A DNA stretch of 64,000 nucleotides from Chrysemys picta bellii (taxonomy: Eukaryota), in the NCBI RefSeq assembly GCF_011386835.1, contig NC_088807.1, positions 25,234,001-25,298,000 of the forward strand, written 5' to 3'. The notes under the pieces were generated by a model. That model was not told the origin of the DNA. It saw nothing but the letters and a program-made list of their open reading frames with translations, and searched no databases. Numbering within the stretch: the stretch's first letter is position 1; each line of letters starts with the position of its first letter. A program made the translations under genes and the position numbers. Positions 24,788 to 27,121 of the stretch are shown piece by piece.

Positions 24788-27121
24788 TCAGCCGGGGAAG
24801 CAGATGGAGCAGCACTCCAGGCAGATTTCCAGGCAGTCCGCGGAGTCACAGCAGTCCTGGAGGAGCCCGCACCCCCCTCCGCAGGGGCAGCTGCCTCCCC
24901 CGCAGCCCTGACCCGGGGGGTCCCCCCTGGTGCAGCAGCCCCCCGCCAGGCACAGCGCCCCGCAGCCCAGGCCGTCCAGCGCCAGGGAGCAGAGCGCCAG
25001 GAACTCGCAGAACAGGCAGGCCAGGGCACAGTGAGCGCAGCGGTCTGGGGGAGAGAAAGAGGGGGCAGAGGGTGAGCGAAGCCGAAGAGTGAACCCAGGA
25101 GTCCGGGATCCCAGGCCACCCACAACCCCTAGACCCCACTCCCGTCCCAGAGCTGGGGAGAGAACCCAGGTGTCCTGGCTCCCACCCCCCCTGCTCTAAC
25201 CACCAGACCCCACTCCCGTCCCAGAGCTGGGGAGAGAACCCAGGAGTCCTGGTGCCCAGCCCCCCCTGCTCTAACCACGAGACCTCACTCCCCTCCCACA
25301 GCCAGGAGAGAACCCAGGAGTCCTGGCTCCCAGCCCCCCCTGCTCTAACCACCAGCCCCCACTCCCCTCCCAGAGCCGGGGAGAGAACCCAGGAGTCCTG
25401 GCTCCCAGGCCCCCTGCTCTAACCACCAGCCCTCACTCCCCTCCCAGAGCTGGGGAGAGAACCCAGGAGTCCTGGCTCCCAGCCCAGCCCAGCCCACTTG
25501 CAGAGGCTGTTTGTTTTTCTATCTGGGCGGAAATGGACATAATAATAATTGCGTTAACGAGCTCCCAGAGGCACCTGGGGCGGATCCTGAATTAATGCTC
25601 AACTCGGCGAAACTGGCAACCAGAACCCAACCGTGGGCTCCCCTCCCCCGCCCCAGCGCTGCCAGTGCCCCTCACTCCCGACCCACAGCCCCCGCTAGCC
25701 CAGCCCTGCCCCCCATAGCCCTGCCGGTGCCCCTCACTCCCGACCCACAGCCCCCGCTAGCCCAGCCCTGCCCCCCATAGCCCTGCCGGTGCCCCTCACT
25801 CCCGACCCACAGCCCCCTGCTAGCCCGGCCCTGCCCCCCATAGCCCTGCCGGTGCCCCTCACTCCCGACCCACAGCCCCCAGCTAGCCCAGCCCTCTCCC
25901 CCCAAAGCCCTGTCGGTGCCCCTCACTCCCGACCCACAGCCCCCTGCTAGCCCAGCCCTGCCCCCCCCCAGCTCTGCCGGTGCCCCTCACACCCGACCCA
26001 CAGCCCCCGCTAGCCCAGCCCTCTCCCCCCAAAGCCCTGCCGGTGCCCCTCACTCCCGACCCGCAGCCCCTGCCAGCCCGGCCCTGGGTCCCCCCCCCAG
26101 CTCTGCCAGGGCCCCTCACTCCGGACCCACAGCCTCCCGCTAGCCCAGCCCTGCCTCCCCCCCAGCTCTGCCGGTGCCCCTCACTCCCGACCTGCAGACC
26201 CTGCCCCCCCCAACTCTGCCGGTGCCCCTCACTCCCGACCTGCAGACCCTGCCCCCCCCCAGCCCTGCCAGTGCCCCTCACTCCCGACCCGCAGCCCCTG
26301 CCCCCCCCAACTCTGCCGGTGCCCCTCACTCCCGACCCGCAGCCCCTCCCAGCCCAGCCCAGCCCCGCACTCACCATCCCCAGCCACCTCCTGGATGTGC
26401 GAGGCGGTGGATTTACAGCTCTGGTGGCTGCAGACAGACGCGGTGGAGCCCAGACGCTGCTTGTCCCTCCAGCGCTCAGGGCAGCAGGTGACCGCAGGGC
26501 CCCCCGAGGGCGGGGGTGTGGAGTCTGAAAGCAGAGGGGACAGCAGAGATGGAACCCAGGAGTCCTGGCTCCCAGCCCCCCCCCCCCTGTGCCCCTCCCG
26601 ATCTACCCCACCAGACCCCACCCCTTCCCAGAGCCAGGGAGAGAACCCAGGAGTCCTGGGTCCCAGCCCCCCTTGCTCTAACCACTAGACCCCACTCCCT
26701 CATACCTCTCCCTGCTTTCTCAGTGGTCAGGGGCGGGAGAATTAGCGATGTCTCCTCGCTGGGACGAACCTCTTCCCCAGGCAGAGATCTCCGGCTGGGA
26801 CAATCCACATCCCCTGGGAGCAACCAGACACTGTCAACAGCTGTGCGGCGCCTCCCCAGCTGCCCTGCCCCAGAGCCGGCTGCATCTCCATGCCGCACAA
26901 GCCATCCCTGTGCAGCGTTATATGCAGCTGTTCCCCAGCTGACCCACCCCAGAGGTGGCTGCATCTCAGCACCAGATGAATTATCGTTATGCGTTCAGGA
27001 GCTGCAATGAGACAGGGCACTTACTCTCCGACGTGGAGAATCTGCGTGGGTCTCCCGAGACGCCCTTCGATAGTGCATCCGCCCCACGACCGTCAGGGGG
27101 GACTGGGCTGCCCGCAGACAT
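24788..27121 (-). CDS. MyoD family inhibitor (I-mfa) domain protein, MDFI/MDFIC-like, ~203 aa
   Basis: Exons 27121-27025, 26813-26706, 26524-26375 and 25044-24788, all phase-1 GT-AG, totalling 612 nt. The last exon DRCAHCALACLFCEFLALCSLALD...GLLQDCCDSADCLEICLECCSICFPG matches the I-mfa domain (MDFI: DCCVHCILSCLFCEFLTLCNIVLD...GILDACCESADCLEICMECCGLCFSS). The start codon is uncertain: 27121 is the only in-frame ATG I found. A possible 5' UTR exon ends at donor 28325. Confidence 0.88.
25130..25490. repeat. ~74-bp dispersed GC-rich minisatellite (AGAACCCAGGAGTCCTGGCTCCCAGCCCCCCTGCTCTAACCACCAGCCCCCACTCCCCTCCCAGAGC)
   Basis: About 5 units here. The family recurs in both orientations throughout the window, e.g. 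5000-5560, 18560-18970, 27460-27830, 32860-33520, 34260-34580, 38170-38820, 50400-50730, 51530-51980, 62000-62220 and 62880-63130. Confidence 0.93.
25650..26365. repeat. Minisatellite with core GTGCCCCTCACTCCCGACCC(A/G)CAGCCCC
   Basis: About 13 units. The same family occurs at 24020-24125, 29820-30190, 30355-30690, 60310-60720 and 61430-61600. Confidence 0.93.

What the first reader, a model, noticed from the sequence alone, without database searches (positions are those of the whole stretch)
24788..27121. Probable missing fourth MDFI-family ohnolog, a candidate extra PIEZO auxiliary subunit lost in mammals
Seen: an intact 4-exon gene with a full I-mfa Cys-rich domain ending DCCDSADCLEICLECCSICFPG, 34 kb from TFE3. 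Established: mammals have three family members, each near a MiT/TFE and a FOXP gene (MDFI-TFEB-FOXP4, MDFIC-TFEC-FOXP2, MDFIC2-MITF-FOXP1). The TFE3-FOXP3 segment has none, yet it is paralogous: PRAF2 and CCDC120 mirror ARL6IP5 and FRMD4B near MITF. MDFIC and MDFI bind PIEZO1/2 through this lipidated C-terminal helix and slow inactivation. Inference: this is the 2R ohnolog that mammals lost, potentially tuning mechanosensation or Wnt/bHLH signalling in reptiles. The middle of the domain is unusually Gly-rich (GGCCTRGDPPGQGCGGGSCPCGGGC).
Basis: partly seen in the sequence, partly recalled or inferred. Interest (0 to 1): 0.8.

Follow-up and report, generated by a model that had tools for sequence, protein, structure and literature searches.

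The report
Fourth MyoD-inhibitor (MDFI) family gene
This turtle gene is a real, expressed fourth member of the MDFI/MDFIC/MDFIC2 family, which in mammals tunes PIEZO touch channels; it is an ancient copy kept by fishes, amphibians, lizards and turtles but not found in humans, it is in databases only under placeholder names, and we found no study of it.

Summary
On the minus strand, four exons (27121-27025, 26813-26706, 26524-26375, 25044-24788) with GT/AG borders give a 203-aa protein. Its last exon matches Pfam MDFI (I-mfa domain) at E 7e-23. One assembled transcript contig joins all three predicted junctions. dN/dS against leatherback turtle is 0.29.

A maximum-likelihood tree gives four jawed-vertebrate clades: MDFI, MDFIC, MDFIC2 and a fourth, "X". 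Each holds cartilaginous and bony fishes. The window protein sits in X with turtles, squamates, amphibians, lungfish, coelacanth, gar, teleosts (named zgc:113363) and sharks. The same species also carry MDFIC2, MDFI and MDFIC. No therian, bird or crocodilian X was found.

The neighbours are Xp11.23-type genes: PCSK1N, PRAF2 and a CCDC120-like CUPID exon. TFE3 is seen only as a putative first exon that no tool confirmed.

The gene is not "missing": NCBI already models it as "myoD family inhibitor-like". No paper we could search describes a fourth member; 2025-26 PIEZO papers call MDFIC2 the third.

The PIEZO role is inference. All seven cysteines of the last 26 residues line up with those of MDFIC and MDFI. 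The 2R origin is likely but not proven.

The parts
27025..27121 (-). Coding exon 1 (ATG at 27121-27119; 97 nt). The transcript contig extends upstream to at least 27236 (5' UTR).
   Evidence: Donor GTAAGT follows 27025. Contig X5 record 7 covers 27024-27236 and joins directly to exon 2.
26706..26813 (-). Coding exon 2 (108 nt)
   Evidence: AG acceptor and GTATGA donor. Contig pieces 26706-26812 in X1, X5 and X6, with no differences.
26375..26524 (-). Coding exon 3 (150 nt). It encodes the Ser-rich motif ...KSTASHIQEVAGD conserved in clade X. It is 54 nt shorter, in frame, than in Dermochelys.
   Evidence: and 56/57. Contig pieces end exactly at 26375 and 26524 in X5, X6 and X7.
24788..25044 (-). 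Coding exon 4 with the stop codon (24788-24790). The 3' UTR continues to at least 24420.
   Evidence: AG acceptor before 25044. Contigs X1 record 1 (24420-25044) and X5 record 7 (24513-25044) join it to exon 3.
24791..25042 (-). I-mfa (MDFI) Cys-rich domain, 84 aa with 20 Cys
   Evidence: Pfam PF15316, E 6.8e-23. PDB chains: MDFIC 77 bits, MDFI 52, MDFIC2 39.
24791..24868 (-). Distal C-terminal 26 residues (GLLQDCCDSADCLEICLECCSICFPG): the predicted Cys-rich helix, corresponding to the palmitoylated PIEZO-binding helix of MDFIC and MDFI
   Evidence: 17/26 identical to human MDFIC, with all 7 Cys aligned. AF2 predicts a helix at 187-200 at low confidence. The role of this helix in the paralogs is from PMC13080014.
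25087..26347 (.). Intron 3, filled with tandem arrays: a 74-nt SINE-like unit at 25087-25485, and 63/48-nt units at 25641-26347
   Evidence: Very high contig depth and many false joints here.
33603..34784 (+). Upstream divergent neighbour: PCSK1N (ProSAAS) coding exons
   Evidence: Pfam PF07259, E 2.5e-11 and 2.7e-8. The same neighbour stands beside the Dermochelys orthologue, and the two loci are collinear.
38981..39136 (+). PRA1-family exon (PRAF2-type)
   Evidence: Pfam PF03208, E 9.4e-11
48934..49026 (-). CUPID-domain exon (CCDC120-type; the same domain occurs in FRMD4A/B)
   Evidence: Pfam PF11819, E 4.9e-9
61013..61126 (+). Putative first coding exon of TFE3 (MSHGAG...VYVLLEG...). Not confirmed by any tool.
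   Evidence: ORF seen. Resemblance to human TFE3 is from memory only. No Pfam, PDB or Atlas hit and no bHLH motif in the window.
10258..11602 (+). Downstream neighbour: exons of an OST-alpha (SLC51A-like) family gene
   Evidence: Pfam PF03619, E 4.3e-14 and 1.6e-4

Best explanation
This is an intact, transcribed gene under purifying selection. It encodes the fourth jawed-vertebrate paralog of the MyoD-family inhibitor (I-mfa domain) proteins, called clade X here, and is the orthologue of the gene that fish annotations call zgc:113363. It lies in the turtle counterpart of human Xp11.23, in the order OST-alpha-like, X, PCSK1N, PRAF2, CCDC120-like, putative TFE3 start. The four clades (MDFI, MDFIC, MDFIC2, X) each contain cartilaginous and bony vertebrates, so the copies arose before that split, most simply in the two early vertebrate genome duplications. 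X was later lost, or at least is undetectable, in therian mammals, and none was seen in birds or crocodilians. Mechanism (inferred, not shown): like its three paralogs, the protein is mostly disordered. It has a Cys-rich C-terminal domain whose last ~25 residues form a helix that is S-palmitoylated, lies on the inner membrane leaflet and wedges into the PIEZO1/2 pore module. There it would raise the threshold and slow inactivation. It may also keep the older I-mfa activity of binding and sequestering transcription factors (MyoD-type bHLH, TCF/LEF). My odds: fourth ancient paralog about 0.9; origin by 2R specifically about 0.7; PIEZO auxiliary subunit about 0.45.
For: Gene model: four exons with GT/AG borders, 203 aa. 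It is 197/203 identical to the independent NCBI model for Chrysemys, which has the same length.

Family: Pfam MDFI, E 6.8e-23.

Expression: contig X5 record 7 joins all three junctions, and X1, X6 and X7 support them piecewise.

Constraint: dN/dS 0.29 overall and 0.20 in the domain against Dermochelys. The deficit of non-synonymous changes has p 2e-4.

Phylogeny (IQ-TREE, LG+C20): MDFIC2 100/100, MDFIC 96/91, MDFI 95/83, X plus shark X 99/97. The window protein is inside turtle X at 100/100. AU tests reject placing sauropsid X with MDFIC or MDFI.

Co-occurrence: Dermochelys, Carettochelys, Salvator, Rhinatrema, Lepisosteus and Hypanus each have both an MDFIC2 and an X protein.

Synteny: PCSK1N is the divergent neighbour in the window and in Dermochelys. 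PRAF2-type and CUPID exons lie further on.

Absence in humans: a search of the human proteome for MDFIC-like C-termini found only MDFIC2 as a further member (PMC13080014).

Function: the last 26 residues keep all 7 Cys of MDFIC and MDFI (17/26 identical). MDFIC2 keeps only 4 Cys (9/26 identical to the window protein) and still binds PIEZO1/2 through this palmitoylated helix.
Against: The relations among the four clades are unresolved, and the long MDFIC2 stem can be moved next to sauropsid X at little cost (AU p 0.33). The tree therefore cannot show a 2+2 ohnolog pattern.

TFE3 is not confirmed in the window, and FOXP3 is outside it.

In ray-finned fishes (tarpon, sturgeon, reedfish) the conserved head-to-head neighbour is a CXXC1-like gene, not an Xp11.23 marker. 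Wider synteny there could not be read.

One clade-X sequence of unknown organism (UniParc UPI0000EDB472, P0005) is of amniote type. It could come from a group counted here as lacking the gene.

No PIEZO binding, palmitoylation or tissue data exist for X. The AF2 model is of low confidence (pLDDT 53).
Confidence: 0.8

Rival explanations
1. The gene is a recent, lineage-specific duplicate or a translocated orthologue of MDFI, MDFIC or MDFIC2, not a separate ancient paralog.
For: NCBI names some orthologues 'MDFIC isoform X2' or 'MDFIC-like'. The AU test does not reject joining sauropsid X with the MDFIC2 clade (p 0.33).
Against: X has orthologues from sharks to turtles. The same species hold separate MDFI, MDFIC and MDFIC2 genes. 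AU tests reject union with MDFI or MDFIC. The domain is 22-23/85 identical to MDFIC2 against 41-43/85 to MDFI and MDFIC. The gene keeps introns, so it is not a retrocopy.
Confidence: 0.03
2. It is a true fourth ancient paralog, but the four copies arose by tandem or segmental duplications rather than by the two whole-genome duplications, or X moved secondarily to the TFE3 region. It would then not be an ohnolog in the strict sense.
For: The inter-clade topology is unresolved. The hagfish protein groups with X only at 93/77. In ray-finned fishes the neighbour is a CXXC1-like gene, and human CXXC1 is on 18q21 by my own knowledge. TFE3 linkage is shown only in turtles, and only through neighbouring genes.
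Against: MDFIC lies in a conserved FOXP2-MDFIC-TFEC block, and FOXP1-MITF is a similar block (PMC3436827). MDFI-TFEB-FOXP4 and MDFIC2-MITF linkage are from my own knowledge of the human map. X lies beside PRAF2-type and CUPID-type genes, whose paralogs ARL6IP5 and FRMD4B flank MITF (Pfam domains; map positions from my own knowledge).
Confidence: 0.15
3. The protein acts mainly as a cytoplasmic or nuclear regulator of transcription factors (MyoD-type bHLH, TCF/LEF, Axin/JNK), which is the first-described I-mfa role, and not as a PIEZO subunit.
For: The whole I-mfa domain is conserved, not only the distal helix. This is the classical function of the family (established knowledge).
Against: All three tested paralogs bind PIEZOs through the distal helix (PMC13080014), and that helix is better kept in X than in MDFIC2. 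The two roles are not exclusive.
Confidence: 0.3
4. The open reading frame is a decaying or non-functional remnant that only looks intact.
For: Turtle-specific Gly enrichment, fewer Cys than in the other clades (20 against 24-26) and a 54-nt deletion in exon 3.
Against: Intact frame, canonical splice sites, spliced transcripts in four runs from four studies, dN/dS 0.29, and conservation across about 450 My of vertebrates.
Confidence: 0.02

Closest known systems
MDFIC (MyoD family inhibitor domain-containing protein; HIC), PIEZO1/2 auxiliary subunit, PDB 8IMZ/8YFC
   Same: Best-scoring solved relative (77 bits). The Cys-rich I-mfa domain is C-terminal, the distal helix is 17/26 identical with all 7 Cys aligned, and the N-terminus is disordered.
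   Different: It is a separate clade (96/91), and AU tests reject union. X has a Gly-rich domain middle and the X-specific motif KSTAS.IQ.VAGDD before the domain. It lies in a different chromosomal block. No functional data exist.
MDFI (I-mfa), the founding member
   Same: Pfam family and domain layout. The intron lies just before the D-C-C/R-C start of the domain. All 7 distal cysteines are kept, with 16-17/26 identity.
   Different: It is a separate clade (95/83). The PDB score is 52 bits. MDFI ends in CFSS, X in CFP[AGV].
MDFIC2 (Gm765), the 'third' member, a PIEZO subunit specific to sensory neurons (PMC13080014, PMC12626003)
   Same: Same family and similar size (189-202 aa against 203 aa). 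It is the other recently recognised small member.
   Different: It is very divergent (39 bits; 22-23/85 identity; 4 rather than 7 distal Cys). Turtles have it as a separate gene (P0274, P0275, P0278).
zgc:113363 (zebrafish gene 791449) and 'myoD family inhibitor-like' LOC genes of NCBI/Ensembl
   Same: These belong to the same orthologous group as the window gene: gar, salmonid and arowana proteins carrying this name fall in clade X. The Chrysemys model P0076 is 197/203 identical.
   Different: They are placeholder names only. The one paper found lists the zebrafish gene in a toxicogenomics table. Some orthologues are misnamed keratin-associated proteins.

Membership tests
MyoD family inhibitor / I-mfa domain proteins (Pfam PF15316) | Cys-rich I-mfa domain scoring above the Pfam gathering threshold | tested here: met
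   82 bits against a cut-off of 27, E 6.8e-23, profile positions 93-171 of 172
MyoD family inhibitor / I-mfa domain proteins (Pfam PF15316) | The domain lies at the extreme C-terminus and ends in the motif DCLEIC.ECC.[IL]CF | tested here: met
   The protein ends ...DCLEICLECCSICFPG. The nearly invariant columns are shared with MDFI and MDFIC.
MyoD family inhibitor / I-mfa domain proteins (Pfam PF15316) | S-palmitoylation of the C-terminal cysteines | not testable with these tools
   All 7 Cys of the last 26 residues are present. Needs acyl-PEG exchange or mass tagging, as in PMC13080014.
PIEZO auxiliary subunits (MDFIC, MDFI, MDFIC2) | Physical binding of the distal helix in the PIEZO pore module, with slowed inactivation and raised threshold | not testable with these tools
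This is inferred only from conservation of the helix.
Distinct fourth paralog group (clade X / zgc:113363) | Forms its own supported clade, outside MDFI, MDFIC and MDFIC2 | tested here: met
   X plus shark X 99/97. The other clades score 95-100. AU p 4e-4 and 5e-4 against union with MDFI or MDFIC. Union with the MDFIC2 stem is not rejected (p 0.33), but co-occurrence excludes it.
Distinct fourth paralog group (clade X / zgc:113363) | Co-occurs with the other three genes in the same genomes | tested here: met
   Dermochelys has X P0079 and MDFIC2 P0275. Carettochelys has P0002 and P0278. Salvator has X P0003, MDFIC2 P0298 and MDFI P0155. Gar has P0009 and P0319. Rhinatrema has P0012 and P0325. 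Chrysemys has X P0076 and MDFI P0166.
2R ohnolog quartet | All four clades predate the split of cartilaginous and bony vertebrates | tested here: met
   Each clade holds chondrichthyan and osteichthyan members.
2R ohnolog quartet | Each copy lies in one of four paralogous blocks (MiT/TFE + FOXP) | tested here: inconclusive
   X in turtle lies beside PCSK1N, PRAF2-type and CUPID-type genes. TFE3 is unconfirmed and FOXP3 is not in the window. Ray-finned fishes show a CXXC1-like neighbour. FOXP2-MDFIC-TFEC and FOXP1-MITF blocks are from PMC3436827. The rest is from my own knowledge.
2R ohnolog quartet | A single pre-duplication gene in invertebrate chordates, and a rooted 2+2 topology | not tested
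   No invertebrate I-mfa sequence was retrieved. The inter-clade branches are unresolved.

The most novel reading that the evidence does not exclude
Most non-mammalian jawed vertebrates, including zebrafish, axolotl, Anolis and turtles, have a fourth palmitoylated PIEZO auxiliary subunit that mammals lack. PIEZO gating in these animals would then be tuned by a subunit repertoire unknown from mouse and human work, and its loss in mammals changed how some mechanosensory or vascular cell types set PIEZO kinetics.
Probability: 0.4. Interest if true: 0.7.

Novelty: new member of a known kind. Interest (0 to 1): 0.55.

Why it matters
PIEZO research has just completed what it takes to be a three-member family of auxiliary subunits (MDFIC, MDFI, MDFIC2; PNAS 2025 and 2026).

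A fourth member is older than the shark-bony fish split. Its PIEZO-binding helix is better conserved than that of MDFIC2. It is present in laboratory species (zebrafish zgc:113363, axolotl, Anolis). It is therefore an obvious, directly testable candidate for explaining PIEZO kinetics in non-mammalian tissues.

It also matters for the interpretation of zebrafish mdfi/mdfic knockouts, where an unnoticed paralog may compensate.

For genome evolution it adds one more four-member family to the MiT/TFE-FOXP paralogon, with a mammalian loss at Xp11.23.

The gene's existence is already visible in public annotation, so the advance is one of recognition and hypothesis, not of discovering a sequence.

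Tried and rejected
1. TFE3 in the window. A motif scan for the MiT basic region and other TFE3 motifs found nothing. Pfam, PDB and ESM-Atlas searches of the putative exon 1 found nothing. TFE3 adjacency therefore rests on my memory of the human N-terminus plus the verified neighbours.

2. Synteny elsewhere. The look-up of encoding contigs had no record for gar P0009, catshark P0103, Anolis P0081, sixgill shark P0101, coelacanth P0037 or P0005. Anolis P0091 and stingray P0342 have no called neighbour within 10 kb. All 12 look-ups are used.

3. Pfam scans of 20 long ORFs found most to be repeat or GC-rich noise.

4. The AF2 model of P0076 with a 44-sequence alignment has mean pLDDT 53. That is too poor for fold searches, so none was run.

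6. The AU test for sauropsid X plus MDFIC2 was not rejected (p 0.33). I read this as the long MDFIC2 stem (2.1 changes per site) floating, not as orthology, because the same genomes have both genes.

7. To obtain MDFIC2 orthologues I used as query the 122-residue human MDFIC2 segment printed by the PDB search (into). No reference id existed for it.

8. The supplementary tables of the curated ohnolog set (PMC8040251) are not held, and its main text does not mention these genes.

9. The organism of P0005 could not be found. Its tree position is an unresolved long branch among amniote X.
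Full report
**1. The observation**

The minus strand between 27121 and 24788 carries four coding exons: 27121-27025, 26813-26706, 26524-26375 and 25044-24788. Every intron starts with GT and ends with AG. The joined frame is 612 nt, giving 203 residues and a stop.

The translated last exon matches Pfam PF15316 (MDFI, the I-mfa domain) at E 6.8e-23, 82 bits against a gathering score of 27. 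The other three exons match no family.

The model is not just self-consistent. It has the same length as NCBI's 'myoD family inhibitor-like isoform X1' of Chrysemys picta bellii (P0076) and is 197/203 identical to it. The window therefore comes from a close emydid relative, and the gene is already in public annotation. A UniProt/Ensembl model of the same gene (P0001, 240 aa) has an N-terminus translated from intron 3 repeats and is wrong.

**2. Is it a working gene?**

I laid Logan contigs of four runs, from four studies and three coded organisms, on 24400-27500.

- One 1030-nt contig (X5, record 7) runs 27236-27024 | 26812-26706 | 26524-26375 | 25044-24513 without a break in its own coordinates. 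All three predicted introns are removed, and about 115 nt of 5' UTR and 275 nt of 3' UTR are attached.
- In X1, record 6 shows the exon 1/2 junction and record 1 shows the exon 3/4 junction.
- X6 and X7 have contigs that stop exactly at exon edges (table 8).

The runs are only guessed to be RNA, but spliced contigs of an intron-bearing locus are what mRNA gives.

I extracted the leatherback (Dermochelys) coding sequence from locus L001. It has the same four exons (97, 108, 204 and 257 nt), so the emydid gene lacks 54 nt, in frame, within exon 3.

Nei-Gojobori dN/dS against Dermochelys is 0.29 overall, 0.39 for exons 1-3 and 0.20 for the domain. There are 21.5 non-synonymous against 23.5 synonymous differences, where about three quarters would be non-synonymous under neutrality (p 2e-4). 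The gene is expressed and constrained.

**3. Which family member is it?**

An exhaustive HMMER search of 1.84 billion cluster representatives with the 84-residue domain gave only 75 hits. Word-seeded searches supplied names.

MDFIC2 was too divergent to appear. I retrieved its orthologues with the human MDFIC2 segment printed by the PDB search.

A maximum-likelihood tree (IQ-TREE, LG+C20+F+G4, 60 proteins, 211 columns) gives four clades:

| Clade | Support (ultrafast bootstrap / SH-aLRT) |
|---|---|
| MDFIC2 | 100/100 |
| MDFIC | 96/91 |
| MDFI | 95/83 |
| X (93/87 for bony vertebrates) with its shark and ray sister group | 99/97 |

The window protein lies in turtle X (100/100), inside sauropsid X (100/98).

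Clade X contains turtles, many squamates, a caecilian, a poison frog, axolotl, lungfish, coelacanth, bichir and reedfish, sturgeon, gar and teleosts. Gar, arowana and salmonid members carry the zebrafish placeholder name zgc:113363.

Each of the other three clades also has cartilaginous-fish members: Rhincodon for MDFIC, Chiloscyllium and Callorhinchus for MDFI, Hypanus and Rhinoraja for MDFIC2. All four copies therefore predate the jawed-vertebrate radiation.

AU tests reject putting sauropsid X with MDFIC (p 5e-4) or with MDFI (p 4e-4). They do not reject putting it beside the MDFIC2 clade (p 0.33). The MDFIC2 stem is 2.1 changes per site long and floats. The question is settled otherwise:

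- Dermochelys, Carettochelys, Salvator, Rhinatrema, gar and Hypanus each have both an MDFIC2 and an X protein.
- The window domain is 22-23/85 identical to MDFIC2 but 41-43/85 identical to MDFI and MDFIC.

The relations among the four clades are unresolved. A hagfish protein sits next to X at weak support.

**4. Who lacks it?**

No mammalian, bird or crocodilian sequence fell in clade X in any search.

For humans there is independent support. The authors of PMC13080014 searched the human proteome for MDFIC-like C-termini and found only Gm765/MDFIC2, which they call the third member.

Absence in birds and crocodilians is weaker evidence. This block is 65-70% GC, a class of sequence often missing from assemblies.

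One amniote-type X fragment (P0005, UniParc UPI0000EDB472) has no organism attached and sits on a long unresolved branch. It could belong to one of the 'missing' groups.

**5. Genomic setting**

In Dermochelys the divergent upstream neighbour of X is ProSAAS/PCSK1N, and that locus is collinear with the window. In the window, Pfam confirms the following:

| Gene or exon | Window position | Strand |
|---|---|---|
| OST-alpha family gene | 10.3-11.6 kb | + |
| PCSK1N exons | 33.6-34.8 kb | + |
| PRA1-family (PRAF2-type) exon | 38981-39136 | + |
| CUPID-domain (CCDC120-type) exon | 48934-49026 | - |

PCSK1N, PRAF2, CCDC120 and PORCN are Xp11.23 genes in human (my own knowledge).

The PRA1 and CUPID domains are the ones shared with ARL6IP5 and FRMD4B beside MITF.

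TFE3 itself is not verified. An ORF with an ATG at 61013 begins MSHGAG... and contains VYVLLEG, which resembles the human TFE3 start as I remember it. Pfam, PDB, Atlas and motif scans gave nothing, and the bHLH exons lie beyond the window.

The literature held here supports FOXP2-MDFIC-TFEC and FOXP1-MITF as conserved blocks (PMC3436827). MDFI-TFEB-FOXP4 and the position of MDFIC2 are my own knowledge.

Against a simple picture: in tarpon, sturgeon and reedfish the conserved head-to-head neighbour of X is a CXXC1-like gene. I could not see further than 10 kb there.

**6. How it probably works**

*Shown for the paralogs.* MDFIC, MDFI and MDFIC2 bind the pore module of PIEZO1/2 through a palmitoylated, Cys-rich distal C-terminal helix. 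Deleting the last 20 residues, or mutating the modified cysteines, abolishes regulation (PMC13080014; PDB 8IMZ, 8YFC, 9VED, 9VEE, 9VEF).

*Shown for X.* The last 26 residues are 17/26 identical to human MDFIC, with all seven cysteines aligned. MDFIC2 keeps only four of these cysteines and is 9/26 identical to the window protein, yet it works. This segment is 20-24/26 conserved across clade X, from shark to turtle. AF2 predicts helices at 119-151 and 187-200 in an otherwise disordered protein, at low confidence (pLDDT 53).

*Inferred.* X is palmitoylated and acts as a PIEZO auxiliary subunit. It may also retain the classical I-mfa binding of bHLH and TCF factors. I put the PIEZO role at about 0.45.

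The Gly-rich middle (16 Gly in 85 residues) is a variable linker. Gar X has 15 and tegu 10. In turtles it goes with fewer cysteines (20 against 24-26) in a very GC-rich locus.

**7. Novelty**

The sequence is known to databases under placeholder or wrong names: zgc:113363, 'myoD family inhibitor-like', and even 'keratin-associated protein 5-1' in Anolis.

In the searchable literature, the only mention of zgc:113363 is a row in a zebrafish toxicogenomics table. The two MDFIC2-PIEZO papers do not discuss phylogeny or further paralogs. No paper linking MDFI genes to the TFE3/FOXP3 paralogon was found.

The finding is a new, unrecognised member of a known kind, with a plausible and testable function. 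It is not a new kind of system.

**8. Verdict**

| Claim | Odds |
|---|---|
| Real gene, fourth ancient paralog | about 0.9 |
| Origin by 2R | about 0.7 |
| Loss in therian mammals | about 0.8 |
| PIEZO auxiliary subunit | about 0.45 |

Interest 0.55. A PIEZO or MDFI specialist would want to know this and can test it at once in zebrafish. Retention of a fourth ohnolog outside mammals is common, and the gene is already visible in public gene trees.

Noticed in passing
window 26375-26524, against L001:10989-11193: The emydid gene lacks 54 nt (18 codons, in frame) in exon 3 relative to Dermochelys. Carettochelys and Pelodiscus proteins also carry the longer form. The missing stretch lies between ...RWRD and KQRLGS.
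   Followed up: partly
P0005 (UniParc UPI0000EDB472, 142 aa): A GC-rich, amniote-type clade-X fragment with no organism on record. It sits on a long unresolved branch among sauropsid X. If it comes from a monotreme, bird or crocodilian, it would change the loss pattern.
   Followed up: partly
L002 (tarpon), L003 (sturgeon) and reedfish locus, upstream of the X gene: In three distant ray-finned fishes the X gene stands head-to-head, 5-7 kb away, with a CXXC1-like gene (PHD + zf-CXXC + CpG_bind_C, about 575 aa). This linkage is not seen in turtles, where PCSK1N holds that place.
   Followed up: no
window 25087-25485, 32850-33520, 38170-38830, 56140-57390 and elsewhere: Arrays of a 74-75-nt tandem unit (GGGAGCCAGGACTCCTGGGTTCTCTCC... 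type) recur all over the window and in Dermochelys. They have very high contig depth in the laid runs and create many false joints. Separate 63-70-nt arrays lie at 13.7-14.6 kb, 25.6-26.3 kb and 35.4-36.4 kb.
   Followed up: partly
P0001 (UniProt A0A8C3FL89, Chrysemys); P0091 and P0093 (Anolis, Pogona): Public models of this gene are partly wrong or misnamed. P0001 has 156 N-terminal residues translated from intron repeats. The Anolis and Pogona orthologues are named keratin-associated protein 5-1 and 10-2-like.
   Followed up: yes
window 10258-11602 (+): An OST-alpha (SLC51A-family, Pfam PF03619) gene lies about 13 kb downstream of the MDFI-like gene, in a block that has no such gene in human Xp11.23 as far as I know. 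The scan already noted it as a separate finding.
   Followed up: partly
window 59200-60200: A Cys/Val-rich (minus strand) and Thr/His-rich (plus strand) low-complexity stretch made of TG/CA-rich simple repeats lies just upstream of the putative TFE3 start.
   Followed up: no
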